IMG/VR virus record: IMGVR_UViG_3300001460_000004
Location: 1-64,000 of that record
Direction: 5' to 3' (one strand)
DNA: 64,000 nucleotides
The position numbers and the translations under genes are program-made. The first letter of the stretch is position 1, and each line of letters begins with the position of its first letter. Below are positions 6,987 through 36,504 of this stretch, piece after piece. Under the pieces are notes generated by a model that did not search any database, had not been told where the DNA came from, and saw only the letters and a program-made list of their open reading frames with translations.

Positions 6987-7559
6987 ATGAATCAAACATT
7001 TATTCCTAAACGGTGGGAAAAGGAAGAGTATCAATCACGAGCTCACACTGTTTTTGAACAAGTTGATTCGTATCTTTCTACTCCCCCCAAACGTATACTT
7101 GATATTGGCTGTGGGTATGCATATATTAGTCAGCAGTTTCAAAAAAAGTATGGGACTGAGCTGTGGCTACTTGAAGGTGACTTTAATGCAACCAATGACC
7201 GCGAACGCAAAGCTAGTTGGGGTGATGTTGATACTATGAAGTTCTATTTGCCGGTTAAACAGTTAAAGAAATACTGGGACGATCAAAACATTTTGTATAA
7301 TTTTGTAGATGCTAACAATATACATATTAACAATAATTTAACATTTGATTTTGTTTGCAGTTGGTTAAGTTGCGGATATCATTATCCAGTTGCCACATAC
7401 CAATCATTAATTAAAAAACACACTAACAGTTCTAGTGTTATTATTATGGATATTAGAACAAAAACATTAAACAAGCAACAAAGTATAGAAGTTGTAAAGA
7501 AATTAGATCACGACAGTGGTAAAAGAAGTCGTTTACATTATAAATTTAAAACAAACTAG
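6987..7559 (+). CDS. class I SAM-dependent methyltransferase
   Basis: ILDIGCG motif I; FDFVCSW..C GYHY. Confidence 0.85.
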   Translation: MNQTFIPKRWEKEEYQSRAHTVFEQVDSYLSTPPKRILDIGCGYAYISQQFQKKYGTELWLLEGDFNATNDRERKASWGDVDTMKFYLPVKQLKKYWDDQNILYNFVDANNIHINNNLTFDFVCSWLSCGYHYPVATYQSLIKKHTNSSSVIIMDIRTKTLNKQQSIEVVKKLDHDSGKRSRLHYKFKTN

Positions 7560-18508: not shown

Positions 18509-19264
18509 ATGCGTAATGTATTTATTACAGCAATGGCTCTTGCTTTGTCAAGCACCGCAGCTTTTGCAAACCCTACAATCTCAGGAGAAGTTGAATTGAA
18601 ATTTGCTGAATCAGCAAATGAAAATATTGGCGGATCTATGGGCGTTGACTTAAACGTTGATGCAGGAATGGGAGCAGTTGCTCTTGAATTTTCTGTTGCA
18701 GACGGTGGTGATCTTACACTTGATAATTGGGCTGTAGGAACAAGTGTTTCAGGCATTGGTGTACATTTTGGTGATGACTTAGGTGTTATGCCGGGTGCTG
18801 AAGGCGAACACACACTAGCTGCTCCAGTGATGGCAGAGTCTCTACGTGTAACAGTTGGCGATGCACAAGTTGCATTTGGTCTTACTGATTGGAGTACTGA
18901 CGTCACAGACATTAGTAACATCCAAGGTTCATACAAAGTTGGAGCTTATACTTTTGCAGGCGACTATAACTTAGATAGCGAAAATATTGTAGTAGGTGCC
19001 GGTTTAGGTGGTTTTAATCTAGGAGTTGCTGACGCTTCTGGTGCAATTACATATGACACAGATGCAGAAGTATTTGGGTTTGAAGGTGTACTAGCTTCAA
19101 ACAGGTTAACTGCTTATGCTAACGGTGACGACGAGGATCCACTACAAAATATTGGTGGCGATTATGCCTACAACATGGGCCCAGCCGATGTTACTTTTGG
19201 TGCTAACTATAATCTTGATGAAGAAGAAATTACCCCAACTGCAACAATTGGTTTTAGCTTCTAA
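18509..19264 (+). CDS. outer-membrane beta-barrel porin
   Basis: Signal peptide ending AFA; amphipathic beta strands; acidic; C-terminal IGFSF BAM-type signal. Confidence 0.8.
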   Translation: MRNVFITAMALALSSTAAFANPTISGEVELKFAESANENIGGSMGVDLNVDAGMGAVALEFSVADGGDLTLDNWAVGTSVSGIGVHFGDDLGVMPGAEGEHTLAAPVMAESLRVTVGDAQVAFGLTDWSTDVTDISNIQGSYKVGAYTFAGDYNLDSENIVVGAGLGGFNLGVADASGAITYDTDAEVFGFEGVLASNRLTAYANGDDEDPLQNIGGDYAYNMGPADVTFGANYNLDEEEITPTATIGFSF

Positions 19265-19290: not shown

Positions 19291-19317
19291 AAAAGCAACG
19301 TTCGCGTTGCTTTTTTT
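19291..19317 (+). terminator. rho-independent terminator
   Basis: AAAAGCAACG-TTCG-CGTTGCTTTTTTT. Confidence 0.9.
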
Positions 19318-19497
19318 ACACCGTTAGTAATACTGGCATAATTAAATTATGCAGCGCCAACAATCAGTTGACGCCGGTTTTAAATCTAAAGTGACGCTTG
19401 ATATGTTATTATCTTTACTGTTCTATTAGTACATAACGCCGCTTCAACCGTATGTAAATCTAGCAATTTTTAACAAACAATTTACGAGGAGAATATA

Positions 19498-20868
19498 ATG
19501 GATGCAATGATTATTGGATTATTGATCTTTATTGCGATCATGGGTTATGTGAGCTATAACATTAACCGAAAATATCAAACATCAAAAGAAGGTTACTTAC
19601 TAGCAGGCAGAGATTTGTCAATCTTTGATATTACAATGAGTATTACAGCAAGCTGGACATTTGCACTAGGTGTGTTGATGATTAGTTTTTTTACTTTTAC
19701 TAAAGGTGCAGCTGGGTGGACATGGTTTGTAGTTCCACAACTAGGCGGCTTGGCTTTAATGGCACTCCTGGCATGGAATATTCTTAAAAAAATGCCTAAT
19801 GGTTTTACTACTATTCAGTTTGTTCGAGAGCGTTATAAAGATAAACGTGTAACTGCATTTTTTCAATTGGTTGCAATTCTCGGTGTATTAAATGCATTAA
19901 TCGGTAACTTAACTGCACTAGGAAATATCAGTGCATATATGAGTGGCGGACTTGTAAGCTATGAAGTATTAGTATGTGTAATGAGTCTTGGTATTCTAGG
20001 GTATACACTCTGGGGAGGGTTAAAATCAAGCGTTGCTACTGACAAAGTACAAACTGGTTTCCTTGTACTACTAGCAGTATTTGGTTTTGGATCTTGGATT
20101 GCATATGGCAACCCAGAAGGTATTAGTGCTACACTTTCAAGTGTAGAAGGTGCAAGTCCAGTATTTGGTAGTATTATGTATGCAATGGGTGCTAACTTAT
20201 TAATGCTAATGAGTGCAAGTCTTGTAAACGACAATGGACTATATCAACGGGTACTTGCTGTTAAAGACAAAGCTCGTGCCTGGCAAGGATTTGTTTGGGC
20301 TGGTGCATTGTTTACAGTTATTGCACTAGGTATTGGAGCATTGGCTGCAACTGGTATCCACACTGGTGTTGAAGTAGTTGACGGTAAATTAAGTACAACT
20401 GCAACACTCGAAGCATTGTTTGGTGGGGTTGGTCTAATTATTATGACATTAGCTATTTTAAGTGCTAGTGCTAGTACTATTGATACAGCATACAATAGTT
20501 TTGGTGCTATGGTTGCAAACGATATGCTTCCCAATAATGAAGATCCAGTACGTACTAGTCGACTAGCAATGTGTGGGCTGTTTATTTTTGTTACAGCCGT
20601 TGCATTATTTAAAATTGATATTTGGATCATCTTTACAACATTTGCACTATTGCGATTAATTACAGTTGCACCAATGGTAATTGGCATTGTAAGTAACTGG
20701 AGTTTTAACACTACACCTATTCTTATTGGTATTGGTCTTGCATTAGTTTATGCATTGTGTGTTAAAACAGGAAATGCATTACCACTAAGTGGTACAACAA
20801 ATAATTTGATTGTACTATTGCTCCCGGCATTAGGAACATTTTTAGCAATTCGTAAAGAACATACTTAA
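19498..20868 (+). CDS. sodium:solute symporter (SSS) family transporter
   Basis: YLLAGR, SITASW, YTLWGGLKSSVATDKVQ, YQRVLA, SASASTID; about 13 TM. Confidence 0.92.
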   Translation: MDAMIIGLLIFIAIMGYVSYNINRKYQTSKEGYLLAGRDLSIFDITMSITASWTFALGVLMISFFTFTKGAAGWTWFVVPQLGGLALMALLAWNILKKMPNGFTTIQFVRERYKDKRVTAFFQLVAILGVLNALIGNLTALGNISAYMSGGLVSYEVLVCVMSLGILGYTLWGGLKSSVATDKVQTGFLVLLAVFGFGSWIAYGNPEGISATLSSVEGASPVFGSIMYAMGANLLMLMSASLVNDNGLYQRVLAVKDKARAWQGFVWAGALFTVIALGIGALAATGIHTGVEVVDGKLSTTATLEALFGGVGLIIMTLAILSASASTIDTAYNSFGAMVANDMLPNNEDPVRTSRLAMCGLFIFVTAVALFKIDIWIIFTTFALLRLITVAPMVIGIVSNWSFNTTPILIGIGLALVYALCVKTGNALPLSGTTNNLIVLLLPALGTFLAIRKEHT

Positions 20869-20870
20869 TA

Positions 20871-22010
20871 ATGAATCCGTGGGATAACCCTAAATTAGGA
20901 TACTATCGTGTTGGAAACAGCACGATGGTATCTAAAATTACTGCCTTTGAAGAAGGTACAAAACAAAATATTCACCCAACTTGGCATTTTGACGACCATA
21001 TATGGAATGCACAAGATTGGAAAACTGAACCCCAAATTGATATATTAGAATTGTACAAAATGCGGGCTCGACAAATACGAGACACATATGATATAGTTGT
21101 AATTGATTATAGTGCCGGTAGCGACAGCCAAACTATAGTAAATGCATTTTTAGACAGTGGGTGTTTTATTGATGAAATAGTGACAGTCTGGAATAGCACT
21201 ATAGACAATAATGTTACCCAAAATAGTGCAGATCCCACCAACATCGAAAATGAATTTAAACATACAACTGCGCCTGGCATAAACGAAATTTTAAAACGCT
21301 CACCTAAAACTAATATTAATTATATTGACATCAGTGAGCAAGCAATACAGTCATATAACCACAGAGAAGATTATACGTGGATTTACCAAACTGCAGAGCA
21401 TTTAAATCCTATATACCAAACTCGATGGGATCCAACAATTAAAAAACCAATACAACAAATACTAGATACTGGTAAAAGTGTTGCATTTGTTAGTGGTATT
21501 GATAAACCCCGAGTAACAATTAAAGACGGAAAATATGCACTATATTTTATAGATAGTCTAGTTAACAATGGTAAAATTGCTAAACCAGGTCATATGTACG
21601 ACAACTATGATAAGGTTTACTTTTTTTGGTCAAGTGACTTTCCTGAAATAGTAATTAAACAAGCTCACTTGGTACGCAAATGGTTTAAAGCTAATCCAGG
21701 GCTAGAACCAATGTTAAATTGGGGCACCAAAACCTATGATAATTTAAGAGTATACGAAACACTAGTGAGAAGTATTGTTTATCCAGAATGGCCAGTGAAT
21801 ACATTTCAATGTTTAAAAGTAACAAGTCCAATTTGGACTGAATGGGACAACTATTTTTGGAAAAACTTTGGAAATAAAGATGAAGGTAAACAATGGTTTG
21901 CTGGGATTGAATACATTGTTAATAATATTGATCACAAATATTTAGACTTCAAAGATGGACGACTAAATAATTTTACTGGAATGATAAATGGACTCTTTGA
22001 AATAGAATGA
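20871..22010 (+). CDS. PP-loop (adenine nucleotide alpha hydrolase-like) protein
   Basis: YSAGSDS variant of SGGxDS; GIDKP. Confidence 0.6.
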   Translation: MNPWDNPKLGYYRVGNSTMVSKITAFEEGTKQNIHPTWHFDDHIWNAQDWKTEPQIDILELYKMRARQIRDTYDIVVIDYSAGSDSQTIVNAFLDSGCFIDEIVTVWNSTIDNNVTQNSADPTNIENEFKHTTAPGINEILKRSPKTNINYIDISEQAIQSYNHREDYTWIYQTAEHLNPIYQTRWDPTIKKPIQQILDTGKSVAFVSGIDKPRVTIKDGKYALYFIDSLVNNGKIAKPGHMYDNYDKVYFFWSSDFPEIVIKQAHLVRKWFKANPGLEPMLNWGTKTYDNLRVYETLVRSIVYPEWPVNTFQCLKVTSPIWTEWDNYFWKNFGNKDEGKQWFAGIEYIVNNIDHKYLDFKDGRLNNFTGMINGLFEIE

Positions 22011-23203
22011 AAATCATAACGGCTAATAATAAATGCTTTACCCGGACATCTCTTAGAGATAAAATTAATCAATACAAAAAAGAATTAAAATCCAAACCAT
22101 ACGTTAATATGTTAAGCAAAGAATGGGAAGACCACTTGGCCGTGTACACTGCATGGCAAGAAGTAGGTGGTACGGTATTAATTAATAATCCACTCAACCC
22201 CCTAGACTTTCAAACAAGAACGTTAGAAAATATGGATCGGTTAAGCCCCAAAGATGCTATATGCTTTCTAACTAGTGGCACCACTGGGCTTAATAAAATT
22301 GTAGTTAACAAAGAAAAACAATTATTACATGCAGCTCGAGTTGTGCAAAGCATGCCTGGATGGGATCCAGATGATCCGCTTGATTATGTTAGCACAATGC
22401 CAGCGTTTACTAGTGGCTTTTGGCACATTGTATTAGCTCCAGCAGTTATGGTGAATAAAACTTGTACCATGATTACTCCTGCTACTAATCCTACTGGCTT
22501 AGGAAATGTACTAATGACATCAACTGGGGCATTAGAACAATTTAAACTGCAACATCCAACACTTAATTTTCACGGATACAAATATGTAAATGCCGGAGCA
22601 AGTCAAGTTTTACCAAAGCATGCAGATATTGCATTTGATCGAGGTGCTGAAAATTTTTACATCACATACGGAATGAGTGAAACAACATCTCCTTCATTAA
22701 CTCGTGTTACTAACATTAGAGATAAAAATGTTGACTGTATGGATTTTAAACCTATTGAGGGAAGCCCATACGAAATAAAACTAGTTGATGGTGAGTTATG
22801 GGTGCGTGGAGATGGTGTATGCGAAAATGCCGCAGACTTTAATAGCGAAGATGGTTGGTTTAAAACAAATGATTACTTTGATCATGTAACCGATGACTTA
22901 GTTAGATTTAACGGTCGTGCAAGTGACTATGTACAAATGAATGGATTTAAAGCAAGTTTACTAGTGATAGAAAACGTTATTGCAGAAAGTGATTGTATTA
23001 ACGGTGAAGTGCTAGCTGTAAAACACAACCGACTAGGAAGCGACTATATTGAGCTCAAACACACAGATCCTAATATAAAGATAACCATAGCACAAATACA
23101 AGACCTATTACAAGACAAATTACCCAAATGTAATATTCCAAGACAATTTACATTTGTTGACTCAATACCAAAAAACCCATTGGGTAAGAAAATGCGCCGA
23201 TGA
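22007..23203 (+). CDS. acyl-adenylate-forming (AMP-binding) ligase
   Basis: TSGTTGLNK, YGMSET, GWFKTND, FNGR, IPKNPLGK. Confidence 0.9.
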   Translation: MKIITANNKCFTRTSLRDKINQYKKELKSKPYVNMLSKEWEDHLAVYTAWQEVGGTVLINNPLNPLDFQTRTLENMDRLSPKDAICFLTSGTTGLNKIVVNKEKQLLHAARVVQSMPGWDPDDPLDYVSTMPAFTSGFWHIVLAPAVMVNKTCTMITPATNPTGLGNVLMTSTGALEQFKLQHPTLNFHGYKYVNAGASQVLPKHADIAFDRGAENFYITYGMSETTSPSLTRVTNIRDKNVDCMDFKPIEGSPYEIKLVDGELWVRGDGVCENAADFNSEDGWFKTNDYFDHVTDDLVRFNGRASDYVQMNGFKASLLVIENVIAESDCINGEVLAVKHNRLGSDYIELKHTDPNIKITIAQIQDLLQDKLPKCNIPRQFTFVDSIPKNPLGKKMRR

Positions 23204-23898
23204 AAAAATTAATATTTCTTGGCACTAGCTCAGGCATCTCAATATTTGAAGAAGCTGCCGAAGCTATGGGATACGAAGTTTACGGTGTTATGGACGGAGA
23301 CTATACAAAAGGTGATGAATATTGGGGTATTCCAGTTATTAACAGCGAAACAGTATTTGATAATCCAAAATTAGCACAGTACTACAAACAAAACTTTGTG
23401 TTCTTTAATGCTATAAATTGGTTACCAATGAACGACAAAATTTCTGTACGCAACACACAAAAACGACATAAGTTTATGCAGTTAATACAACAACACAATT
23501 TAGAGTGTATTAATATTATTGAAGAAGGTTCGTATGTTAGTACAAAATCTACAAAGTTAGGNACAAACATTTATCTTGGGCATTGGATTGCAATTGAACC
23601 TCATTGTGTTGTGGAAGATTTTGTTAGTTTGTTTGGGCACACGTTTTTAGGGCACCATACACAGGTGGGAGAAAATTCTCAAATACAACGACATGGAGAA
23701 ATGTACGGAAATGTTAGATTGGGGAAAAATTCTTATGTAGGCACCCATGCTGGCATAGTACAAGATTGTGTTGTAGGAGACAATGTATGGATACAACCAG
23801 GTATTAGAGTGTGCAGAAACGTAGAAAATAATGAAATAATTGGTGCTACTAAAAAAAGTCTAAGAAAAACAGTACCATACTATGGTACTTTTCCTTAA
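23200..23898 (+). CDS. NeuD/PglD-like left-handed beta-helix sugar acetyltransferase
   Basis: N-terminal Rossmann-like start, hexapeptide repeats, GHH. Confidence 0.8.
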   Translation: MKKLIFLGTSSGISIFEEAAEAMGYEVYGVMDGDYTKGDEYWGIPVINSETVFDNPKLAQYYKQNFVFFNAINWLPMNDKISVRNTQKRHKFMQLIQQHNLECINIIEEGSYVSTKSTKLXTNIYLGHWIAIEPHCVVEDFVSLFGHTFLGHHTQVGENSQIQRHGEMYGNVRLGKNSYVGTHAGIVQDCVVGDNVWIQPGIRVCRNVENNEIIGATKKSLRKTVPYYGTFP

Positions 23899-23916: not shown

Positions 23917-23945
23917 TTGACATATGAGTAATTGTACCGTATACT
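23917..23945 (+). promoter_or_regulatory. sigma70-type promoter
   Basis: TTGACA-N17-TATACT. Confidence 0.8.
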
Positions 23946-23977: not shown

Positions 23978-25075
23978 ATGTCAGAGACAAGAACAGTAAC
24001 GGCGTTAACAGCAACAAATGCAATTCAAAAGTGCTTTGCTAAAAAACGCCCTGTGTTTTTATGGGGTCCTCCCGGTATTGGTAAAAGTGAGATAGTCGAA
24101 AGCATTATCGCTAAAATGGGCGGTTTAATGATTGACTTACGTTTGGGTCAAATGGATCCAACTGATATACGAGGTATTCCTTTTTACAATAAAGAGAAAG
24201 GTGTTATGGACTGGGCACCACCTGTAGAGCTACCAAGTGAAGAACTTGCATCCCAGTTTCCCATTGTGGCTGTATTCTTTGATGAAATGAACAGTAGTGC
24301 TCCTGCTGTACAAGCTGCATCGTACCAGTTAATACTTAATCGTCGAATTGGACAATACAAATTACCCGATAATGTAGTAATGATTGCAGCTGGTAATAGA
24401 GAAAGTGACAAAGGTGTTACATATCGTATGCCTACTCCGCTTGCTAACCGTTTCGTACATTTAGAAATGCGTCCTGATTTTAATTGCTGGTTAGATTGGG
24501 CTGTACAAAACAACGAACACAAAGACGTTGTAGGTTATTTGCAATTTGCAAAACAAGACTTATATGATTTTGATCCTAAAAGCTCAAGTCGTTCTTTTGC
24601 TACACCACGTACTTGGAGTTTTGTAAGTGAACTTATTGAAGATGATGACGGTACTGATCCAAGTGGATTAACAGATCTTATTGCTGGTACGATTGGTGAA
24701 GGACTTGCTATTAAGTTTATGGCACATCGTAAGTTTGCAGGTGATCTACCAAATCCTGAGGATATCTTAGATGGTTCTGTAAAAGAACTTAAAGTAAAAG
24801 AGATCAGTGCAATGTACAGTTTAGTTGTTAGCTTGTGTTACGAGCTAAAAGCAAGTCTCGAAGATGACAGTGTTAATGATAAAAAATGGCACGAGTATGT
24901 TGATAACTTCTTTGCTTATATGATGGACAATTTTGAAACTGAAATTGTTGTTATGGGTGCAAGGATTGCATTAACTACATACGAACTACCAATGCAACCA
25001 ACTAAACTTAAAAACTTTGATCGGTTATATGAAAAATATGGCAAATATATTGTTAAGTCCAACCAGGCCGCTTAA
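23978..25075 (+). CDS. MoxR-like AAA+ ATPase
   Basis: GPPGIGKS, FFDEMN, AAGNR, LANRF, TPRTW. Confidence 0.92.
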   Translation: MSETRTVTALTATNAIQKCFAKKRPVFLWGPPGIGKSEIVESIIAKMGGLMIDLRLGQMDPTDIRGIPFYNKEKGVMDWAPPVELPSEELASQFPIVAVFFDEMNSSAPAVQAASYQLILNRRIGQYKLPDNVVMIAAGNRESDKGVTYRMPTPLANRFVHLEMRPDFNCWLDWAVQNNEHKDVVGYLQFAKQDLYDFDPKSSSRSFATPRTWSFVSELIEDDDGTDPSGLTDLIAGTIGEGLAIKFMAHRKFAGDLPNPEDILDGSVKELKVKEISAMYSLVVSLCYELKASLEDDSVNDKKWHEYVDNFFAYMMDNFETEIVVMGARIALTTYELPMQPTKLKNFDRLYEKYGKYIVKSNQAA

Positions 25076-25753: not shown

Positions 25754-27031
25754 ATGAGTCTAGAAACTGATGCTAAATCTAATAATAAACCTCTTAAATA
25801 TCTACTAGGTGATACTGACCCTAAACTTGATGCAGAAATGCGTGAAAAACTTATTACAGCACGAGTTGGGTTGTTGCTAAACAATCAATTTTTTGGTAAC
25901 TTGGCTACACGACTTAAATTAGTAAATGCCGATAAGTGGTGTACTACTGCCGCAACTGATGGGAGACATTTTTATTACAACAGTCGATTCATTGAAATGT
26001 TGTCTCAAAAAGAAGTTGAATTTTTGTTTGGGCACGAAGTATTGCATGTAGCATATGATCATTTTGGTCGTAAAGGTGAACGAGATCACCAACTTTGGAA
26101 TGTTGCTTGCGACTATGCTGTAAATGGAGATCTCAAGTGGCACAAGGTAGGACAATTTATTACAACAGTNCCGGCATTGTATGATCCTAAATACAAAGAT
26201 ATTGCAAGCGAAGAAATATATGATGAACTGTACGAAAATGCAGAAAAAATTAATATTGATGATTTAATTGACAAACTATTAGATGAACACATTGATGCCG
26301 ATGATGCAAATGAAGAAGGTGCAGGACCTGGTGAAGAAGGACACGATACTAGTAAGCCAATTCCGTTAACCAAAGAACAAAAAGAACAAATTAAAGATGA
26401 AATGAAAGAAGCATTAATTAATGCGGCTAGTACAAGTGAAGCTGGAAAAGTACCAGCTGGCATACAACGTATTATTAAAGATCTCACTGAGCCTCAAATG
26501 GACTTTAGAGAATTGTTGCAAATGAATATTCAAAGTTTAATTAAAAATGATTTTACATTTGCAAAAGTAAGTCGCAAAGGTTGGCATTTTGATGCAGTAC
26601 TACCTGGTATGAACAACGACGAAGCAATTGATATTGCAATTGGATTGGATCTAAGTGGTAGTATTACTAACGAAATGGGCCGAGATATGATAAGTGAAAT
26701 ATACGGCATTACACAACAATTTGGTACATTTAAAATACATTTGTTTACATTTGACACAGAAGTATATAACTATCAAGTTTTTGATAGTGACAGTGGTCAA
26801 GATATTAGCGAATACGAACTTAAAGGAGGTGGCGGCACTTCATATGAATGCATATTTAACTTCCTTAAAGAAGAGGGCATTGAACCTCAAAAATTAGTAG
26901 TGTTTACAGATGGATATCCGTGGAATACATGGGGTGATCCAAACTACTGCGAAACATTATGGATTATACATAGCAACCCTAATCCAGAACCAGAGTTTGG
27001 TGATTGGGTTCCATATCAACTAGCGGCATGA
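25754..27031 (+). CDS. zincin metallopeptidase plus vWA domain protein (DUF2201-like)
   Basis: TAATDG, HEVLH, WNVACD; MIDAS DLSGS, GGGGT, FTDG. Confidence 0.9.
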   Translation: MSLETDAKSNNKPLKYLLGDTDPKLDAEMREKLITARVGLLLNNQFFGNLATRLKLVNADKWCTTAATDGRHFYYNSRFIEMLSQKEVEFLFGHEVLHVAYDHFGRKGERDHQLWNVACDYAVNGDLKWHKVGQFITTXPALYDPKYKDIASEEIYDELYENAEKINIDDLIDKLLDEHIDADDANEEGAGPGEEGHDTSKPIPLTKEQKEQIKDEMKEALINAASTSEAGKVPAGIQRIIKDLTEPQMDFRELLQMNIQSLIKNDFTFAKVSRKGWHFDAVLPGMNNDEAIDIAIGLDLSGSITNEMGRDMISEIYGITQQFGTFKIHLFTFDTEVYNYQVFDSDSGQDISEYELKGGGGTSYECIFNFLKEEGIEPQKLVVFTDGYPWNTWGDPNYCETLWIIHSNPNPEPEFGDWVPYQLAA

Positions 27032-28297: not shown

Positions 28298-29308
28298 ATG
28301 AGTGAAGATAGAGACGTTATTCCTACAGTTTTAGTAACAGGTGGATTAGGGTTAATTGGGCATCATGTTGTAAGTCAACTTGAAGAACAAGGCTATGATG
28401 TAGTTGTTACTGACACTAAGACCAACTACAACGGACTTATACCTAATGACGAACTCAACTATTTGATTGGCGAGCGTTCAAAGAAAATAAGAACGCAAGA
28501 AATATACAATGTTGATATTTGCGACTCTGGTCGTATGGAAGCTATTTTTAACAAATATCGTCCCGAAACAATTGTGCATTTAGCAAGTTTTCCAAGACAA
28601 AAAGTAGTAAATGCTAATCCTCAAAGTGGTAGTAGAACTATGAGTGAAGGATTACTTAACTTATTGGAACTTAGTGCCAAGTATAGTAGCAAACGATTTG
28701 TTTACATAAGCAGTAGTATGGTTTATGGTAGTTTTGAAGATGATGTTAAAGAAGATGCCGCAATGAATCCACAAGGACAATACGGTATTATGAAACTAGC
28801 TGGTGAATGGTTAGTTAAAGATTACACACGTAAATGTGGTATTGAGCATGTTATTATTCGCCCAAGTGCAGTTTATGGTCCTTTGGATGTACAAGATCGA
28901 GTTGTAAGTAAGTTTATGATCTCGGCAATGCAAGGCAAAGAGCTTAGTGTAAACGGTAAAAGTGAAACATTAGATTTTACGTATGTAACAGATGCAGCCG
29001 ACGGTGTTGTTGCAGCAGCAACTATTCCGCAAGCAGCCAACAATACATATAACATTACCAAAAGTCATAGTTGGACATTATATGATGCAGCCGAGTTAGC
29101 TGTAAAAATTGCTGGTAACGGAACAATAAATGTAAAAGACAAAGATATGGATTTTCCCAGCCGAGGTGCGTTAAATATTGATTCGGCTAGAGCTGATTTA
29201 GGATTTGACCCTAAAGTTGACTTAGAAGAAGGGTTTGAACGCTACTATGAATGGTTTAAAGATTCCGTTTACTGGTCTGAAAAAGCAGTACCTCAATCTC
29301 AAGACTGA
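28298..29308 (+). CDS. NAD-dependent NDP-sugar epimerase/dehydratase (extended SDR)
   Basis: VTGGLGLIG, SSSMVYG, YGIMK, RPSAVYGP, DFTYV. Confidence 0.93.
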   Translation: MSEDRDVIPTVLVTGGLGLIGHHVVSQLEEQGYDVVVTDTKTNYNGLIPNDELNYLIGERSKKIRTQEIYNVDICDSGRMEAIFNKYRPETIVHLASFPRQKVVNANPQSGSRTMSEGLLNLLELSAKYSSKRFVYISSSMVYGSFEDDVKEDAAMNPQGQYGIMKLAGEWLVKDYTRKCGIEHVIIRPSAVYGPLDVQDRVVSKFMISAMQGKELSVNGKSETLDFTYVTDAADGVVAAATIPQAANNTYNITKSHSWTLYDAAELAVKIAGNGTINVKDKDMDFPSRGALNIDSARADLGFDPKVDLEEGFERYYEWFKDSVYWSEKAVPQSQD

Positions 29309-30347
29309 AATACTCGACACAAGTGACGCTGTGTATCATAGCGGAAAACTGATTGACGGTAATCAAACTATTGAATTTGAAAATTGGCTTGCAAAGAAAA
29401 ATAATGTTCGTTATGCAATCACAATGCATAGCGGTACGCAAGCACTAGAAACTATTGCAAGATTTAATAAGAACAAACTTATTGTTGAAACTCCTCTAGT
29501 ATTACTTCCAACATTTACTTATATTGCAACTGCAAATGCATTTTTAACCGCTGGTTGGAAAGTTCAATTTGCTGATTGCAACAGCCACGGCGTGAGTACA
29601 TATACCAAAAATGAAATTGATGAAAGCATTGATGCCGCTGTATTGGTTGGAATTTTTGGCAAACAAGTCAACGATCCTTGGGAAGAACGTATACACAATA
29701 AAAATTGGAAACTTTCCAATACTGAATTAATAGAAGATGGTGCACAACATTGGTTATCAGCTGGATGTAAACGAGTTGCTGATACTGCTATTAGTTTTGA
29801 TCCAATGAAAAACTTTAACAGTTATGGCAACGGTGGTGCAGTTGTAACAAATGATATTGAATTGTACAACTTTTCTAATCACTTTCGTACAAACGGGAAA
29901 GACTGGCAACAAAGTTCACAGTACGGAACCAACAGTCGTATGAGTGAAATTGATTGTGCTCAAATGTTAGTAAAGAGTCGTTACATTGACAAATGGCAAA
30001 CTAAACGTCAAGAAATAGCAGAATATTGGATTGAAAGATTTACTGAAGCCCGGATTGAATGTCTAATAACACGAAGTGAATTAAAAAATCACGCTATAAG
30101 TAAATTTGTTATTAATATTGAAAATAGAAATGAAATAAAACGTAAATTGGATACAAGGCAAATAGAAACAAAGATACATTACCAAACACCTTTACACGAA
30201 AGATTTCCAGAGTTTAAAGGTCCTAAAGGAATGTGTACAGCAGGTGCGTTAGCTAGACATACGTTATCATTACCAATGTATCCAGAACTTACTGATCTTG
30301 AAGTTGAGTATATTGCTGATCAAGTAATTTCTTGTGTAGCCGGGTAA
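29247..30347 (+). CDS. DegT/DnrJ/EryC1/StrS PLP-dependent sugar aminotransferase
   Basis: SGTQAL, TYIAT, EDGAQ, SFDPMKN (catalytic Lys), LSLPMYP. Confidence 0.92.
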   Translation: MNGLKIPFTGLKKQYLNLKTEILDTSDAVYHSGKLIDGNQTIEFENWLAKKNNVRYAITMHSGTQALETIARFNKNKLIVETPLVLLPTFTYIATANAFLTAGWKVQFADCNSHGVSTYTKNEIDESIDAAVLVGIFGKQVNDPWEERIHNKNWKLSNTELIEDGAQHWLSAGCKRVADTAISFDPMKNFNSYGNGGAVVTNDIELYNFSNHFRTNGKDWQQSSQYGTNSRMSEIDCAQMLVKSRYIDKWQTKRQEIAEYWIERFTEARIECLITRSELKNHAISKFVINIENRNEIKRKLDTRQIETKIHYQTPLHERFPEFKGPKGMCTAGALARHTLSLPMYPELTDLEVEYIADQVISCVAG

Positions 30348-32106
30348 AGTGTTGTTTTAGCCAAGCCCAATCATAACTTTTCTTTAAATCTTCAAAATTT
30401 CCATCAACACTTGTATAAAATTCTTGTGCATTGTTTGCTCCTATTGCACTCCAGTCATGATTGCCGGTTGCTGTTAACCAACATTTTAAACGATATTGAT
30501 TTTCAATAGTTGTATTGTCATCTAGTAATTTTAATGTTTCTCTAAATGCAGTTCTCCAGGCCATCCAAGGATCAACTGCATAATGTGCAGTTCCACTTAA
30601 TATTGGGACTACTTCATGTAAATTATCTAATGTAAAGTCTAATCCATGCCCATTATTTGCAAGAACCAGTTCTTTATTGTATGCAATCATTGCCATGTGT
30701 CCATATTCTAATCCATTGATTGGATTGCGAGCATGAAATATATAGTGCTTGGGAGATTGTAAAAAGTCTGGTTGCCATTGCCAATTAAAATTAGATTCAA
30801 CTTCTAACTTAGCAAACACTGCAAAGAACCAAGGAGTGTTACTAGCTTTGGCTGCAGCATGGTAAGCGGCTACACGTCCATTAACACCGTCTATACGCAT
30901 AACTCGGTTGCTACAGGCGCTTGTACTGCGTTGTAGGGCATTATAATTTGCTTCTGCATTTGTTTCCCCGTTGCTAATAAAAACAATGTCTAAAGGTGTA
31001 TCTGTATAATTTTTAAAAGTTAAGTCTACATAAGGATAGTCGTATAATTGTGCAATAGTTCCAGCAACTGCATCTTTAGGTATTAGTGTTGTACTGCCAC
31101 TTGAAGTTAATGGAACAACAGCTCTAGTTTTTGATCTCCACAGTGGCATTGTAGGCACAGGAGGTAAATTAATTGTATGTTGGGTAGTAAACAACGCATA
31201 ATGCCCGGGCCATGCATGCTTTGCAATTTCATTTACGTGACTGTTGCTGTTGTGTTTTATAATATTTGGCACAGTACGAGGCACAATAATATCATCAACA
31301 AAGTTTAAATCGTACCATTCAAGCAATTCAAACTCTTGTATCTTATTTGTAAATGTTGGTACATGCATAAAAAAAGTGTCGCCAAACTTTTGTTCATTAC
31401 TAGCAAATACATGCAACATTTGATTTTGCCATGTTTCGGGATGCCAACTAAAATCAAAGCTACTGTAATCACAGCAATCACTGGTAATCCAAATATACTC
31501 TTTGTTACTATAATAGTTTGCAATGCGTTTTAGTGTACCTAAATAAGTGTCAAAAAATCTAAACGTTTTATCTATGTTTGTACAAGATGGTGCATTCGTG
31601 TGTGCAATGCTACAACGTATATCAGCAACGGCAACAGCTAGGCTATTACTTTGACTAACATACTTGTCATCCTTAGCACCAGGCATTGCATATATTGGTC
31701 CGCCTGTTTTTTGCCATTGAGTTCCAAACTTATATAAAAAAGCTGGACTGCTATAATCAGGATGCCAAGTGTAGTCAAAATCTTTAACTGTGCCTGTGTT
31801 GTCCCACAATGTCATATCAGTGTATGTGCGTAGCTGTGTGTTGTGGTAATGGGTATCCGTGTAGCCTTGTTTGGGTATTAGGTATGTTCCACTGTCTTTC
31901 TGCCACACACTGCCAAACGCATGTCTTTGTGTTGATTCCCATGGTTTTGGTTCATAAAGAAAATCATGCTGTTTGTAGTCAACTAAGTAATTGAGTATCC
32001 AAAAATACCTAGTGCGGGACAATGTTTGAGCATGAAGTATACTTTCAACACACATTTCGTGAGGCAATACCCCAGGTGCTTTTCCTATATAGAATACATC
32101 ATACAT
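30289..32106 (-). CDS. multi-module GT-A-like protein (paralog of 49903-50826)
   Basis: RIDGVNG..AYHAAA, NPINGLEYG and AWRTAFRE are shared with 49903-50826; repeated F.W.P..W modules. Confidence 0.6.
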   Translation of the reverse strand: MYDVFYIGKAPGVLPHEMCVESILHAQTLSRTRYFWILNYLVDYKQHDFLYEPKPWESTQRHAFGSVWQKDSGTYLIPKQGYTDTHYHNTQLRTYTDMTLWDNTGTVKDFDYTWHPDYSSPAFLYKFGTQWQKTGGPIYAMPGAKDDKYVSQSNSLAVAVADIRCSIAHTNAPSCTNIDKTFRFFDTYLGTLKRIANYYSNKEYIWITSDCCDYSSFDFSWHPETWQNQMLHVFASNEQKFGDTFFMHVPTFTNKIQEFELLEWYDLNFVDDIIVPRTVPNIIKHNSNSHVNEIAKHAWPGHYALFTTQHTINLPPVPTMPLWRSKTRAVVPLTSSGSTTLIPKDAVAGTIAQLYDYPYVDLTFKNYTDTPLDIVFISNGETNAEANYNALQRSTSACSNRVMRIDGVNGRVAAYHAAAKASNTPWFFAVFAKLEVESNFNWQWQPDFLQSPKHYIFHARNPINGLEYGHMAMIAYNKELVLANNGHGLDFTLDNLHEVVPILSGTAHYAVDPWMAWRTAFRETLKLLDDNTTIENQYRLKCWLTATGNHDWSAIGANNAQEFYTSVDGNFEDLKKSYDWAWLKQHFTRLHKKLLDQQYTQLQDQ

Positions 32107-33220
32107 GATTAGAATCGACGAAATTTATAATAATATATTCTGGCCTTTTATTGATAAAAATATTCGAAATACTCGAATGTTTTATTGTGATCCACCTGGT
32201 ACAACTCGTCCTGAAAATTTGTTTAATTATGGAAATGAAAGTATTGAGGACAAGTATATAATTTTTCATGATCAAGAACCAATACATTTGGATGTTCATT
32301 ACGACTTGTTTACAACAATTGATGCTAGTGTACAAGACTTGTGTGAAGGTAGTGGGGCACTGTTTAGCGGTTTGGTTAGCAGTGAGTTTCGAAGCGAGGC
32401 GGCTAAAAAAGTTTGTGATTTTTACGAACTTAATCATTACTATTATTTTTTCCATGGGTGGGCGGCGCTTGATTGGTACAGAGGGTATGATAAAACTTTT
32501 TTAATAAGTGCTCCAGAAGATCGCAAATTAAAATACAGCATGATAAACCCTAATCGAATTATAGGTGGTAAACGTGATCATCGTGTAATACTATTTTACA
32601 TGATGAACCAGCTAGGTGTCAAGAACTCATTGACGTCATTTCCACAAATTTGTCCGGAAGAGCAGTCTAATATACTAACAATTGCTCAACGCTTTAGTAA
32701 AAGATATCCTGACATCGTTAATATACTTAGCGAGCAAAATTTACCATTAGATTTTCCCAACGAATCCGGTCACCCTATGCACAGTTGTTGGTTAAGTTTA
32801 TTTGACTTGTGTGAACAAAGTTTGCTGCATGTTGTTACTGAAACAGTATTTTTTGGAAAACGCAATCATCTAACTGAAAAAACATTCAAACCTATATGTC
32901 TTAAAATGCCATTTGTACTAGCAAGCTCGGCTAACAGTCTAGATTATTTGCATCGATATGGATTTAAAACATTTAGTTCTATATGGGATGAAAGTTATGA
33001 TGACGAACAAGACGATTTTGTCAGATTAGAAAAAATTGCAAAATTACTTAAAGATATTGACAACCTAAGTCTTAAAGAACAAAATCAATTACACAAGCAT
33101 GCTATTCCAATTGTAGAGCACAACTTCAATTATTTTTATGGAGGTGAATTTGAACGTGTATTATGGGATGAGCTCAGTCGAATGTTACAACGTATGGAAA
33201 ACAATTTTTTATTTAAATGA
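32105..33220 (+). CDS. putative glycosyltransferase (GT-B/GT10-like)
   Basis: VVTETVF..LTEKTFKPI..PF..GFKTF..DESYD. Confidence 0.6.
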   Translation: MIRIDEIYNNIFWPFIDKNIRNTRMFYCDPPGTTRPENLFNYGNESIEDKYIIFHDQEPIHLDVHYDLFTTIDASVQDLCEGSGALFSGLVSSEFRSEAAKKVCDFYELNHYYYFFHGWAALDWYRGYDKTFLISAPEDRKLKYSMINPNRIIGGKRDHRVILFYMMNQLGVKNSLTSFPQICPEEQSNILTIAQRFSKRYPDIVNILSEQNLPLDFPNESGHPMHSCWLSLFDLCEQSLLHVVTETVFFGKRNHLTEKTFKPICLKMPFVLASSANSLDYLHRYGFKTFSSIWDESYDDEQDDFVRLEKIAKLLKDIDNLSLKEQNQLHKHAIPIVEHNFNYFYGGEFERVLWDELSRMLQRMENNFLFK

Positions 33221-34374
33221 TATTTGTTTATGATAATTTAGATCCTGTAACAGGAAAACCTATACCAAACTTAGCAGATCCTAATGCTAAAAACTGGGAC
33301 CAATCGTGGCCACGTGTTGTGAATTTAAGATTGTTAGAGTTTTTTGATCGTGCAGGATTACAATACAGTGTTACTGACACAAACAGCACAGGATGGTATC
33401 CTATAGCATTTAGTTGGTTTGATTTTGAAATTGATTATATTAAATTAATTCCAAAAGCAGTATTTGAACACATCCAAAACAATCGTATACAACTATTATT
33501 TTATTATCACGAAGGAGATAATCCTAAACTGATTAGTAAACGTATTGATGATTTATGCAAACAATGGAACTTGCCAGATAGTTGGCGGTTTATTAGTGCA
33601 AATACTAATGTAAGTACAGTTAAGAATGGTGTTTATTTTAATGACCATGTAAACTTTTTTGCTAGAATAAACAGACATCAAATTTTTACGCCAGATGTAT
33701 ATACAAAAGTATATACATTTACTTTGCTTAATCGTCATCATAAAAATTGGAGAGGTACTATTACTAGCCAGTTGTGGGGCAAAGGATTATTGATTGATGC
33801 ACTGTACAGTTATAATACTGCAAAAGATGTAATTGAACCTACTGATCATTTGGATAATCCAATATCACTAAGTGATCTAGACAATGGTATTGATTGGTAT
33901 AATACATTTAAATTTGAACAACCCATGTATGCTGACAACAACAATAGTGACTTACACAATAATCATTCACAAGTAAATCAATTTCTTTATACTAACAGCT
34001 ATTTTCAAGTTGTAATGGAAACTCATTTTGATAACGATGGCAGCAATGGTGTATTTTTAACTGAAAAAACTTATAAATGTATAAAGTATCAACAGCCGTT
34101 TGTAATTGCTAGCGGTGCATACAGTGTTGCACATTTACGTGATGAGGGCTACAATGTGTACGATGATGTTATTGATCATAGTTATGATAAAATCAAAGAT
34201 AATACACAAAGATGTATAGCACTAATAAATGAAATTCAAAGATTATCTAATATAGTGGGTCCATTATGGACAGCTCAAACAATGCGTACAAGCGAATACA
34301 ATGCATATAAATTTACCCAAGCATGTATTGAATCAGTAAATAATGTTTATAAGGAGTTATTATGTCAAAAATAA
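33217..34374 (+). CDS. putative glycosyltransferase (GT-B/GT10-like)
   Basis: VVMETHF..FLTEKTYK.I..PF..DHSYD. Confidence 0.6.
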   Translation: MIFVYDNLDPVTGKPIPNLADPNAKNWDQSWPRVVNLRLLEFFDRAGLQYSVTDTNSTGWYPIAFSWFDFEIDYIKLIPKAVFEHIQNNRIQLLFYYHEGDNPKLISKRIDDLCKQWNLPDSWRFISANTNVSTVKNGVYFNDHVNFFARINRHQIFTPDVYTKVYTFTLLNRHHKNWRGTITSQLWGKGLLIDALYSYNTAKDVIEPTDHLDNPISLSDLDNGIDWYNTFKFEQPMYADNNNSDLHNNHSQVNQFLYTNSYFQVVMETHFDNDGSNGVFLTEKTYKCIKYQQPFVIASGAYSVAHLRDEGYNVYDDVIDHSYDKIKDNTQRCIALINEIQRLSNIVGPLWTAQTMRTSEYNAYKFTQACIESVNNVYKELLCQK

Positions 34375-36223: not shown

Positions 36224-36235
36224 TAGTATTTTCTT

Positions 36236-36478: not shown

Positions 36479-36504
36479 TGTTATTTCCTTTGTTAATATA
36501 TTAT

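What the first reader, a model, noticed from the sequence alone, without database searches (positions are those of the whole stretch)
19498..23898. Uptake-and-activate operon: SSS transporter, PP-loop ATPase, acyl-adenylate ligase, sugar acetyltransferase
Four coupled genes (2-nt gap, then ATGA overlaps). The enzyme logic suggests importing a solute, adenylating it and transferring an acyl group onto an amino sugar, since the NeuD/PglD fold acts on NDP-amino sugars. It may supply an unusual acyl or amide substituent to the glycan made by the 28-53 kb island. Transporter-led biosynthetic operons are unusual in phages.
Basis: partly seen in the sequence, partly recalled or inferred. Interest (0 to 1): 0.6.

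Follow-up and report, generated by a model that had tools for sequence, protein, structure and literature searches.

The report
Phage solute-uptake and acyl-transfer gene cassette
A marine jumbo phage carries four tightly packed genes (a membrane importer, two different acid-activating enzymes and a sugar acyltransferase); relatives show these are two recurring modules joined together, one built around an uncharacterised virus-only enzyme family that almost always sits beside nutrient-uptake genes.

Summary
In detail: four same-strand ORFs at exactly the stated coordinates, with a 2-nt gap and then two ATGA overlaps, bounded by terminator- and promoter-like signals. The family calls hold. Gene 1 is a sodium:solute symporter (SSS) type permease. 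Gene 2 is a PP-loop enzyme with no sequence-family hit, but with an SAGSDS motif and a fold closest to the asparagine synthetase B/beta-lactam synthetase synthetase domain; it has no glutaminase domain. Gene 3 is a short ANL adenylating enzyme. Gene 4 is a NeuD/PglD-like acyltransferase that keeps the catalytic His.

Relatives show a composite.
- The PP-loop family is virus-only (513 IMG/VR contigs). It sits beside TctC/DctP binding-protein genes in 84 of 109 cases, once beside a TctA permease, and beside an SSS only in this lineage.
- The SSS clade always neighbours an AMP-binding plus hexapeptide pair (5 of 5 clusters).
- The short ANL elsewhere pairs with the same acyltransferase, or lies inside the radical-SAM island.

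"Uptake, activate, transfer" is therefore supported by context. The substrate, the acceptor and the "glycan" nature of the island remain inferred. I rate it a new variant of a known logic, of moderate to good interest.

The parts
18509..19264 (+). Possible outer-membrane beta-barrel protein (P0181, 251 aa). It is a separate transcription unit just upstream and only a possible part of the import route.
   Evidence: Signal peptide, G/D/A/T-rich composition and a C-terminal ...GFSF. No Pfam or PDB hit. The ortholog in L008 keeps its position and weakly resembles the OMP_b-brl protein of L099 (E 8e-4).
19291..19314 (.). Terminator-like hairpin followed by a T-run, ending the upstream unit.
   Evidence: consensus scan only
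19315..19342 (+). Promoter-like site (TTTACA-16-CATAAT with TG).
   Evidence: consensus scan; the number of sites found is no higher than in shuffles
19486..19491 (+). GAGGAG ribosome-binding site, 6 nt before the ATG.
19498..20868 (+). SSS-type permease (P0001, 456 aa, about 12-13 hydrophobic spans).
   Evidence: TIGR00813 E 5e-13, below its cut-off. Matches the DUR3 urea symporter at 2e-6. Homologs at 38-40% identity carry PF00474. phrog_20720 at 1e-31. Hydropathy.
20871..22010 (+). PP-loop ATP pyrophosphatase, AsnB-synthetase-like and without a glutaminase domain (P0002, 379 aa); a member of a virus-only family.
   Evidence: No Pfam, NCBIfam, PHROG or PDB sequence hit. SAGSDS at residues 81-86; the family consensus is SGGSDS with S81, G83 and D85 invariant. 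AF2 model pLDDT 90. Best structural matches are AsnB (Z 11.2, 287 aa aligned), beta-lactam synthetase (10.0), human ASNS (9.8), TsnB9 (8.7) and CarA (8.3); other PP-loop enzymes score 7.6 or less. Foldseek.
22007..23203 (+). Short ANL-superfamily adenylating enzyme (P0003, 398 aa) with a reduced N-terminal subdomain.
   Evidence: PF00501 at 39.8 bits, above the 29.9 cut-off. Motifs TSGTTGLNK(89), YGMSE(221), TND(287), GRASD(303) and GK(393). AF2 pLDDT 89. TM 0.76-0.80 to MenE, 4-chlorobenzoyl-CoA ligase, McbA, MatB and DltA. It belongs to a distinct clade of 373-406 aa proteins.
23200..23898 (+). NeuD/PglD/VioB-like left-handed beta-helix acyltransferase (P0004, 232 aa).
   Evidence: TIGR03570 E 1.5e-22 over residues 4-213, below its cut-off. 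Hexapep at 33.8 bits, above 27. Matches PglD structures at 3e-9, with His152 aligned to the PglD catalytic His.
23871..23889 (+). Hairpin at the 3' end of gene 4 (weak terminator-like site).
23917..23945 (+). Promoter-like TTGACA-17-TATACT ahead of the next unit (AAA/MoxR-like gene at 23978).
28298..29308 (+). NDP-sugar 4,6-dehydratase/epimerase (SDR), probably making the precursor of the acyl acceptor.
   Evidence: PF01370 at 2.5e-47; TIGR01181 at 2.6e-36. Conserved in L008. An SDR also lies two genes upstream of ANL-LbH in L090.
29235..30347 (+). DegT/PseC-like sugar aminotransferase, probably making the amino-sugar acceptor.
   Evidence: PF01041 at 3.7e-49; TIGR03588 at 9e-34.

Best explanation
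This is a composite 'import, activate, transfer' cassette made of two modules that jumbo phages of this clade use separately.

Module A is the SSS permease plus the PP-loop enzyme. The permease brings a small organic acid into the infected cell. The PP-loop enzyme resembles the synthetase half of asparagine synthetase B. It would adenylate a carboxylate of that compound and convert it to an amide with ammonia or another amine.

Module B is the short ANL enzyme plus the PglD-like transferase. The ANL enzyme would activate a carboxylate as acyl-AMP and then, most likely, as acyl-CoA. The transferase would put the acyl group on an amino group, most likely of an NDP-4-amino-4,6-dideoxyhexose made by the dehydratase and aminotransferase 4.4 kb downstream.

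Shown: gene order and coupling, folds, motifs, and conserved neighbourhoods.

Inferred: direction of transport, carboxylate nature of the solute, CoA as the intermediate carrier, the sugar acceptor, and that both modules act on the same compound. A di- or tricarboxylate would fit, amidated at one end and transferred through the other.
For: 1. Translational coupling and unit boundaries.
2. A close relative (L008/L009) keeps all four genes in order, followed by AAA, DUF2201, SDR and DegT.
3. The PP-loop fold is closest to carboxylate-adenylating amide-forming enzymes: AsnB, beta-lactam synthetase, carbapenam synthetase and TsnB9.
4. In relatives, 84 of 109 distinct PP-loop proteins have a TctC- or DctP-like gene within 1.5 kb. 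The DctP-like match is PF03480 at 1e-42, and the TctC-like proteins match BugD and Bug27. One PP-loop gene is followed 3 nt later by a TctA permease, and two loci add a porin. TRAP binding proteins are restricted to carboxylate ligands (PMC4646407). TTT systems are reviewed in PMC5812351.
5. The SSS-linked pair is one clade (support 100) nested next to SBP-linked sisters. One uptake component has therefore replaced another.
6. All 5 clusters of this SSS clade sit next to an AMP-binding plus Hexapep pair. L007 also has a second AMP-binding + Hexapep + MFS triad.
7. ANL-LbH recurs as a pair in L090 beside an SDR. The short ANL lies amid radical-SAM paralogs homologous to window 40-48 kb in L091 and L093-L099.
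8. The ANL has intact core motifs, including the A10 Lys. Its nearest structures act on small, often dicarboxylic or aromatic acids: MenE, MatB, oxalyl-CoA synthetase and 4-chlorobenzoyl-CoA ligase.
9. The transferase keeps the PglD catalytic His.
Against: - No substrate is known for any of the four proteins.
- The two modules occur apart in almost all relatives, so their adjacency here may reflect a variable hot spot upstream of the conserved AAA-DUF2201 pair rather than one pathway.
- The ANL and hexapeptide genes beside the about-40%-identical SSS genes are not detectably orthologous to P0003 and P0004.
- The SSS, NeuD and AsnB matches are all below curated cut-offs or structural only.
- The genome fragment has no carrier protein, no NTP-transferase and no clear GT2, and the island is dominated by radical-SAM/SPASM genes.
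- There is no RNA evidence.
Confidence: 0.4

Rival explanations
1. Two unrelated modules are merely juxtaposed. SSS plus the PP-loop enzyme would be a nutrient-capture device: it imports an acid and traps or converts it by amidation for general phage metabolism, such as an amino-acid, nucleotide or cofactor precursor. ANL plus LbH would serve the downstream island on its own. The overlapping codons would reflect phage genome compaction only.
For: - The PP-loop gene occurs without ANL/LbH in 85 of 88 loci, and ANL-LbH occurs without SSS/PP-loop in L090.
- In L002 and L011-L015 the PP-loop module sits in the same slot upstream of AAA-DUF2201, and in L090 the ANL-LbH module does. That suggests a shared insertion hot spot.
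- Between the window and L008, ANL (48%) and LbH (42%) diverge far more than SSS (87%), PP-loop (74%) and AAA (81%), as if they were a separately exchanged cassette.
- Bug-type binding proteins include aspartate, nicotinate and quinolinate binders (PMC11452294).
Against: - The SSS clade is beside an ANL plus LbH pair in 5 of 5 clusters, even where no PP-loop gene is present. At least SSS and ANL/LbH therefore look functionally tied.
- The four genes share one promoter-to-terminator unit and have overlapping stop/start codons.
Confidence: 0.3
2. The acyl acceptor is not a nucleotide sugar. The cassette would acylate a peptide or protein matured by the radical-SAM/SPASM enzymes, or an envelope lipid. 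The hexapeptide enzyme would then act like LpxA/LpxD or another non-sugar acyltransferase.
For: - SPASM-type radical-SAM enzymes typically mature peptides (own knowledge), and 5-6 paralogs fill 40-48 kb.
- In L091 and L096-L099 the short ANL sits between an outer-membrane beta-barrel gene and an Asp/Asn beta-hydroxylase-family gene; LpxO belongs to that family (own knowledge). There is no LbH and no sugar gene there.
- P0004 also matches LpxD (1.3e-10) and LpxA (2.6e-6).
- No canonical glycosyltransferase or NTP-transferase was found.
Against: - The best match of P0004 over both domains is NeuD/PglB/VioB (1.5e-22), and PglD is the top solved structure, with the catalytic His conserved.
- The dehydratase and DegT aminotransferase that make PglD-type acceptors are on the same strand 4.4 kb downstream, and are kept in L008.
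- An SDR lies next to ANL-LbH in L090.
Confidence: 0.15
3. The PP-loop protein is a nucleic-acid-modifying enzyme (QueC-, TilS-, MnmA- or TtuA-like), unrelated to the transporter. It would modify phage DNA or tRNA.
For: - PP-loop enzymes in phages are often of this kind (own knowledge).
- Three family members give very weak QueC hits (best E 0.05), and one Atlas neighbour cluster carries QueC in 13% of members.
- TtuA, MnmA, TilS and LarE appear among the structural matches.
Against: - Those matches are Z 7 or lower and cover only the 150-180-residue core. AsnB-type synthetase domains reach Z 8.3-11.2 over 272-287 residues.
- The family's conserved neighbours are solute-binding proteins, permeases and porins, not preQ0 or tRNA genes.
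Confidence: 0.07

Closest known systems
Asparagine synthetase B synthetase domain and its kin (beta-lactam synthetase, carbapenam synthetase CarA, hydroxyamidotransferase TsnB9)
   Same: PP-loop motif after the first strand. An alpha/beta core plus helical C-terminal part aligns over 272-287 residues (Z 8.3-11.2). The implied chemistry is carboxylate adenylation followed by attack of a nitrogen nucleophile.
   Different: There is no N-terminal glutaminase domain and no Cys at position 2. No PF00733 or other sequence-family match even at E 1. Sequence identity is about 10%. The family is found only in viral contigs, and its conserved partners are uptake genes.
PglF/PglE/PglD (bacillosamine) and PseB/PseC/PseH-type trios: dehydratase, aminotransferase, N-acyltransferase
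   Same: The same three enzyme classes lie on one strand (23200-23898, 28298-29308, 29235-30347). P0004 has the two-domain NeuD/PglD architecture and keeps the catalytic His.
   Different: P0004 scores below the TIGR03570 cut-off (80 against 160.8 bits). It is translationally coupled to a dedicated ANL enzyme, which suggests a donor other than acetyl-CoA. It is separated from the sugar genes by the AAA-DUF2201 block.
O-antigen/spore-sugar pathways that attach unusual N-acyl groups to 4-amino-4,6-dideoxyhexoses using a dedicated acid-activating enzyme plus acyltransferase (Vibrio cholerae O1 tetronate-perosamine RfbK-O; Bacillus anthracis anthrose AntA-D). This comparison is from own knowledge and was not tested here.
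   Same: The logic of acid activation followed by N-acyl transfer to an amino sugar.
   Different: Here the acid seems to be imported (SSS) rather than made in situ. No acyl carrier protein is encoded in the 230 kb held. The host is a phage genome.
N-acetyl sugar amidotransferases (WbpG/PseA/LfnA type; Legionella structure 8wex)
   Same: PP-loop enzymes that put an amide/amidine nitrogen on glycan precursors.
   Different: The structural match is weak (Z 4.6, rank 49). No NCBIfam model matched P0002 at E 0.01.
Sodium:solute symporters (PutP, SiaT, ActP, DUR3)
   Same: Size, about 12-13 hydrophobic spans, a TIGR00813 match over 338 residues, and a DUR3 match.
   Different: The match is far below the family cut-off. 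The clade has only five clusters, all on phage-like contigs, and no relative was found in 185,579 species genomes by the pattern scan. The substrate is unknown.
Tripartite tricarboxylate (TTT) and TRAP transport systems
   Same: Relatives of the PP-loop gene sit beside TctC-, DctP- and once TctA-family genes.
   Different: The window itself has none of these. In relatives the membrane subunits are usually missing. The DctP-like proteins lack a signal peptide while the TctC-like proteins have one.

Membership tests
PP-loop (N-type) ATP pyrophosphatase superfamily | SGGxDS-type pyrophosphate-binding loop after the first beta-strand | tested here: met
   SAGSDS at residues 81-86. The family consensus is SGGSDS, with S81, G83 and D85 invariant in 42 sequences.
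PP-loop (N-type) ATP pyrophosphatase superfamily | Rossmann-like alpha/beta ATP-binding fold | tested here: met
   AF2 model pLDDT 90. More than 35 PP-loop structures match at Z 5 or higher.
PP-loop (N-type) ATP pyrophosphatase superfamily | Significant match to a curated sequence model of a PP-loop family | tested here: not met
   There were no Pfam, NCBIfam or PDB sequence hits. Only E 0.05-0.2 hits to QueC, ThiI or ATP_bind_3 appeared, in 1-3 of 42 members.
Asparagine synthetase B (class II amidotransferase) | N-terminal Ntn glutaminase domain with catalytic Cys | tested here: not met
   Only about 55 residues precede the PP-loop domain and the N-terminus reads MNPWDN. The model aligns to AsnB from residue 120 on.
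Asparagine synthetase B (class II amidotransferase) | Synthetase-domain fold including the C-terminal helical part | tested here: met
   Z 11.2, 287 aligned residues, rmsd 5.2, above all non-AsnB PP-loop enzymes (7.6 or lower).
Asparagine synthetase B (class II amidotransferase) | Aspartate/ammonia-dependent ATP to AMP + PPi activity | not testable with these tools
   This needs an enzyme assay.
Sodium:solute symporter family (TC 2.A.21, PF00474/TIGR00813) | Sequence match at the family threshold | tested here: inconclusive
   TIGR00813 gives E 5e-13 but 48.8 bits against a cut-off of 184. P0001 has no PF00474 hit of its own, but homologs at 38-40% identity carry PF00474.
Sodium:solute symporter family (TC 2.A.21, PF00474/TIGR00813) | Polytopic membrane protein with about 13 helices (LeuT fold) | tested here: inconclusive
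   Hydropathy shows about 12-13 spans. The structure was not modelled here.
ANL superfamily (acyl-CoA synthetases, NRPS adenylation domains, luciferases) | PF00501 match above the gathering score | tested here: met
   39.8 bits against 29.9.
ANL superfamily (acyl-CoA synthetases, NRPS adenylation domains, luciferases) | Core motifs A3 (T/S-S-G-T/S-T-G-x-x-K), A5 (YGxTE), A7 (T-G-D), A8 (GRxxD hinge) and A10 (catalytic Lys) | tested here: met
   TSGTTGLNK at 89, YGMSE at 221, GRASD at 303, GK at 393. A7 reads TND instead of TGD, with the Asp kept. Most of these are invariant in the 15-member clade.
ANL superfamily (acyl-CoA synthetases, NRPS adenylation domains, luciferases) | Two-domain fold (large N-terminal, small C-terminal domain) | tested here: met
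   TM 0.76-0.80 to MenE, CBAL, McbA, MatB and DltA. The N-terminal domain is about 90-100 residues shorter than in those structures.
NeuD/PglB(PglD)/VioB sugar N-acyltransferases (TIGR03570) | N-terminal alpha/beta domain plus C-terminal left-handed beta-helix, matched at the family cut-off | tested here: inconclusive
   The model is matched over residues 4-213 of 232 at E 1.5e-22, but 80.2 bits is below the 160.8 cut-off. Hexapep is above its own cut-off.
NeuD/PglB(PglD)/VioB sugar N-acyltransferases (TIGR03570) | Catalytic His of PglD (general base) | tested here: met
   His152 (in LGHH) aligns with the His of the PglD IEHE motif in the HMMER alignments to 2npo and 2vhe.
NeuD/PglB(PglD)/VioB sugar N-acyltransferases (TIGR03570) | Acyl-CoA-dependent N-acylation of an NDP-amino sugar | not testable with these tools
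   This needs an enzyme assay.

The most novel reading that the evidence does not exclude
The virus-exclusive AsnB-like PP-loop family would be the cytoplasmic 'capture' enzyme of phage-encoded, envelope-spanning organic-acid import routes. These routes are built from interchangeable parts: an outer-membrane barrel or porin, an exported TctC-like binding protein, a signal-less DctP-like protein, and a TctA or SSS permease. This would be a clade-wide trait of 320-375 kb aquatic jumbo phages. In this marine lineage the route has been wired directly to an ANL plus PglD-like acyl-transfer module. An imported di- or tricarboxylate would then be amidated at one end and attached through the other to the product of the radical-SAM/amino-sugar island.
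Probability: 0.25. Interest if true: 0.75.

Novelty: new variant of a known kind. Interest (0 to 1): 0.6.

Why it matters
Phages are known to carry single uptake helpers such as PstS. Dedicated importers wired to biosynthetic enzymes are rare in them. Only one other IMG/VR contig (the L007/L105 record) carries a relative of this SSS clade, and INPHARED holds a single weak (27%) SSS match.

The more general result concerns the PP-loop family. It is large (513 IMG/VR contigs), entirely uncharacterised and virus-only, and its gene neighbourhood points consistently to imported carboxylates. That gives a testable entry point. The ligands of the neighbouring TctC/DctP-like proteins can be screened directly and would name the enzyme's substrate.

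If the cassette does decorate a phage product with an environment-derived acid, infection chemistry would depend on dissolved organic matter in seawater. It would also explain why the ANL/LbH pair diverges much faster than its flanks, in a specificity-switching, serotype-like manner.

Tried and rejected
- blastn of the 4.4 kb against INPHARED phages found no match. tblastn of P0002 found none. P0001 gave one weak hit in an unannotated faecal phage contig.
- P0002 gave nothing against Pfam, NCBIfam, PHROGs, PDB sequences, or a PDB search with a 42-sequence profile.
- I considered that the 325- and 399-aa genes after the SSS in L007 might be PP-loop relatives. They are not. They belong to an unknown multi-copy family also present at window 32-34 kb and 45.7-46.8 kb.
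- I tested whether the ANL and Hexapep genes beside the distant SSS genes are orthologs of P0003 and P0004. They are not detectably so.
- A pattern scan of 185,579 species genomes for the SSS clade found nothing. The scan for the PP-loop family found only 5 short contigs in freshwater MAGs, probably binned phage fragments.
- The genome fragment holds no TctC- or DctP-like gene and no second PP-loop copy. It has no PP-binding carrier and no NTP_transferase, and only a sub-threshold GT2 hit.
- Literature searches for phage-encoded TTT/TRAP binding proteins, PP-loop partners or transporter-led phage operons found nothing relevant. 'DctP' also matches 'dCTP'. The one huge-phage envelope preprint does not mention these families.
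- Expression: no run on record as RNA holds the stretch. One possible RNA run holds a single 257-base contig, which proves nothing.
- P0181 has no Pfam or PDB hit. The outer-membrane call rests on sequence features only.
- The large representative-protein search and complex prediction were not used. No claim here rests on them.

Full report
WHAT IS THERE

The window is the first 64 kb of a 230 kb IMG/VR virus record, which CheckV rates as 66% complete, so this is a jumbo phage. The first junction is TAA-TA-ATG. The next two are ATGA overlaps.

The unit has recognisable boundaries, though all are consensus matches only.
- Upstream there is a terminator-like hairpin (19291-19314), a promoter-like site (19315-19342) and a GAGGAG ribosome-binding site.
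- Downstream there is a hairpin (23871-23889) and a TTGACA-17-TATACT site ahead of the next gene.

The GC content of the four genes equals that of the genome. Near-identical DNA occurs in marine and brine metagenomes of 19 studies. Independent contigs span the gene 1/2 and gene 3/4 junctions. No RNA evidence exists. The single N at 23562 lies in a GGN (Gly) codon.

THE FOUR PROTEINS

Gene 1 (P0001) is an SSS-type permease.
- It matches TIGR00813 at E 5e-13 over 338 residues, although below that model's cut-off.
- It matches DUR3 urea symporter structures at 2e-6.
- Homologs at 38-40% identity carry PF00474.
- It has about 12-13 hydrophobic spans.

Gene 2 (P0002) matches no Pfam, NCBIfam, PHROG or PDB sequence, even with a 42-sequence profile.
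- It carries SAGSDS at residues 81-86. The family consensus is SGGSDS, with S81, G83 and D85 invariant.
- It folds with pLDDT 90.
- An exhaustive structure search puts the asparagine synthetase B synthetase domain first (Z 11.2, 287 residues). Beta-lactam synthetase (10.0), human ASNS (9.8), TsnB9 (8.7) and carbapenam synthetase (8.3) follow. All other PP-loop enzymes score 7.6 or lower and cover only the core.
- There is no glutaminase domain.
- The PP-loop call is therefore right and can be sharpened. It is an AsnB-like, synthetase-only enzyme, whose relatives adenylate a carboxylate and form an amide.

Gene 3 (P0003) is an ANL enzyme.
- PF00501 scores above its cut-off.
- Motifs A3, A5, A8 and A10 are intact, and A7 reads TND.
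- The model has TM 0.76-0.80 to MenE, 4-chlorobenzoyl-CoA ligase, the amide-bond synthetase McbA, MatB and DltA.
- Its N-terminal domain is shortened. It belongs to a small distinct clade of 373-406 aa proteins.

Gene 4 (P0004) matches the NeuD/PglB/VioB model over both domains at E 1.5e-22, below that model's cut-off. It matches PglD structures at 3e-9. His152 aligns with the PglD catalytic His.

WHAT RELATIVES SHOW

A close relative (L008/L009) keeps all four genes, followed by AAA, DUF2201, SDR and DegT in the same order. Identities are uneven: SSS 87%, PP-loop 74%, AAA 81%, SDR 74%, but ANL 48% and LbH 42%.

Beyond that lineage the unit falls apart into two modules.

(i) The PP-loop family.
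- Its Atlas clusters are virus-only. It is present on 513 IMG/VR contigs. It is absent from INPHARED. It appears on only five short MAG contigs among 185,579 species genomes.
- Of 109 distinct family members in 88 loci, 84 have a TctC- or DctP-like gene within 1.5 kb, usually adjacent and on the same strand. Eleven have only a tandem paralog beside them.
- The DctP-like match is solid (PF03480 at 1e-42; TRAP structures at 2e-20). The TctC-like proteins match BugD and Bug27.
- The TctC-like proteins have signal peptides. The DctP-like proteins have none.
- L004 and L010 add a porin.
- In L041 the PP-loop gene is followed 3 nt later by a TctA permease, with an MFS gene 1.4 kb further on.
- In the tree, the two SSS-linked sequences form one clade (support 100). 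That clade is sister to six binding-protein-linked sequences (support 100). The SSS therefore replaced another uptake component next to the same enzyme.
- The window's genome has no TctC- or DctP-like gene.

(ii) The SSS clade has only five clusters, and all five sit next to an AMP-binding plus Hexapep pair.
- In the window and in L008/L009 the order is SSS-PPL-ANL-LbH.
- In L007, L106 and L107 the order is LbH-ANL-SSS, with no PP-loop gene.
- Those distant ANL and LbH genes are not detectable orthologs of P0003 and P0004. The triad is conserved at superfamily level only.
- L007 holds a second AMP-binding + Hexapep + MFS triad.

(iii) The short ANL clade.
- In L090 it pairs with an ortholog of P0004 (39%). 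An SDR and a DUF2061 membrane protein precede the pair, and AAA-DUF2201 follows it.
- In L091 and L096-L099 it sits in a DUF2061 - OM barrel - ANL - 191 aa block (L091, L096-L098 add an AspH-like gene; L093-L095 keep only ANL - 191 aa), surrounded in all of L091 and L093-L099 by radical-SAM/SPASM paralogs. Those paralogs are homologous to the ones at window 40-48 kb.
- In L092 it sits next to Kdo/NeuB-type and CMP-transferase genes.

(iv) Five near-complete relatives of 317-374 kb all carry 6-12 of these radical-SAM paralogs. Radical-SAM and PP-loop genes are both clade-wide, so their co-occurrence is not specific. The short ANL is not clade-wide.

HOW IT MOST LIKELY WORKS

What is shown is four co-oriented, translationally coupled genes, their folds and motifs, and their recurrent neighbourhoods. 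The following steps are inferred.
- The SSS imports a small organic acid.
- The AsnB-like enzyme adenylates a carboxylate and amidates it.
- The ANL enzyme activates a carboxylate. CoA is the likeliest carrier, since the 230 kb held encode no carrier protein.
- The PglD-like enzyme N-acylates the 4-amino sugar made by the dehydratase (28298-29308) and the DegT aminotransferase (29235-30347).

A di- or tricarboxylate would fit several observations. The partners of the PP-loop family are TTT and TRAP components. TRAP ligands are restricted to carboxylates (PMC4646407; TTT systems are reviewed in PMC5812351). The nearest ANL relatives include MatB, oxalyl-CoA synthetase and MenE. I give this single-pathway model 0.4.

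THE RIVALS

- Main rival (0.3). The two modules merely share a variable slot upstream of the conserved AAA-DUF2201 pair. The same slot holds the PP-loop module in L002 and L011-L015, and holds ANL-LbH in L090. The much faster divergence of ANL and LbH also suggests a separately exchanged cassette.
- Second rival (0.15). The acceptor is a peptide or an envelope lipid rather than a sugar. The island is rich in SPASM genes. OM-barrel and AspH-like genes flank the ANL elsewhere. P0004 also matches LpxD and LpxA. No NTP-transferase and no clear GT2 was found.
- Third rival (0.07). The PP-loop protein modifies nucleic acids. Both the structure ranking and the neighbourhoods argue against this.

COMPARISON WITH WHAT IS KNOWN

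The logic of dehydratase, aminotransferase and LbH N-acyltransferase is that of PglF/E/D and PseB/C/H. Adding a dedicated acid-activating enzyme recalls the tetronate-perosamine and anthrose pathways; this comparison is from my own knowledge and was not tested here. P0002 works like an AsnB or beta-lactam-synthetase synthetase domain. It fails membership on two counts: it has no glutaminase domain and no sequence-model match. It is also far from the N-acetyl-sugar amidotransferases (Z 4.6).

Three things are new. The PP-loop family itself is uncharacterised. It is consistently tied to phage-encoded uptake parts. In this lineage an importer is fused to an acyl-transfer module. I rate this as a new variant of a known kind, with interest 0.6.

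Noticed in passing
window 18509-19264 (+): This 251-aa protein has a signal peptide, a G/D/A/T-rich composition and a C-terminal ...GFSF, which are outer-membrane beta-barrel hallmarks. It lies directly upstream of the cassette and is conserved in L008. Outer-membrane barrels or porins recur beside the related modules in L004/L010, L091/L096-L099 and L092.
   Followed up: partly
L002-L089 (relatives); e.g. L004 9298-10251: The DctP-family proteins next to the PP-loop genes have no signal peptide, whereas the neighbouring TctC-like proteins have classical ones. A cytoplasmic TRAP-type binding protein is unexplained.
   Followed up: partly
L055 6986-10459; L044 2469-11527; L019 5722-8170: The PP-loop family is often present as two or three tandem paralogs (136 genes in 88 loci), sometimes interleaved with TctC-like genes.
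   Followed up: partly
L041 6956-12970: Here the PP-loop gene is followed after 3 nt by a TctA-family permease, then by a DctP-like gene and an MFS transporter. It is the only relative found with a TTT membrane subunit.
   Followed up: partly
window 40125-48220 (-), also 7546-8766 (-): This is a run of five or six radical-SAM paralogs, at least two with the SPASM domain N-terminal to the radical-SAM core, which is an unusual order. Each of five near-complete 317-374 kb relatives carries 6-12 copies.
   Followed up: partly
window 32105-33220, 33217-34374 (+), 45667-46803 (-); genome ~204 kb and ~212 kb: This is a multi-copy, virus-only family without a Pfam match. The nearest named Atlas clusters are GT10 fucosyltransferases at 0.79, which is a lead only. 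Members directly follow the SSS gene in L007, L106 and L107.
   Followed up: partly
window 22007-23898 vs L008 5895-7775: ANL and LbH are only 48% and 42% identical between the two close relatives, whereas the flanking genes are 68-87% identical. This suggests cassette exchange or fast change of specificity.
   Followed up: partly
window 23978-25075 and 25754-27031 (+): A MoxR-like AAA ATPase and a DUF2201 (metallopeptidase-like plus VWA-like) protein form a conserved pair downstream. The slot just upstream of this pair varies between relatives, holding the PP-loop module, the ANL-LbH module, or both.
   Followed up: partly
window 35390-38883 (-): This stretch holds a Zeta-toxin/AAA_33-like kinase (35390-36223), a NodU/CmcH-like carbamoyltransferase (36505-38010) and a PNP_UDP_1 phosphorylase-family gene (38317-38883), at the edge of the radical-SAM island.
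   Followed up: no
window 56335-63693 (-): A giant ORF of 2452 aa or more, possibly open to the window end. It was not examined.
   Followed up: no
window 23562: There is a single ambiguous base (N) inside gene 4. It falls at the third position of a GGN codon, so the residue is Gly regardless.
   Followed up: yes
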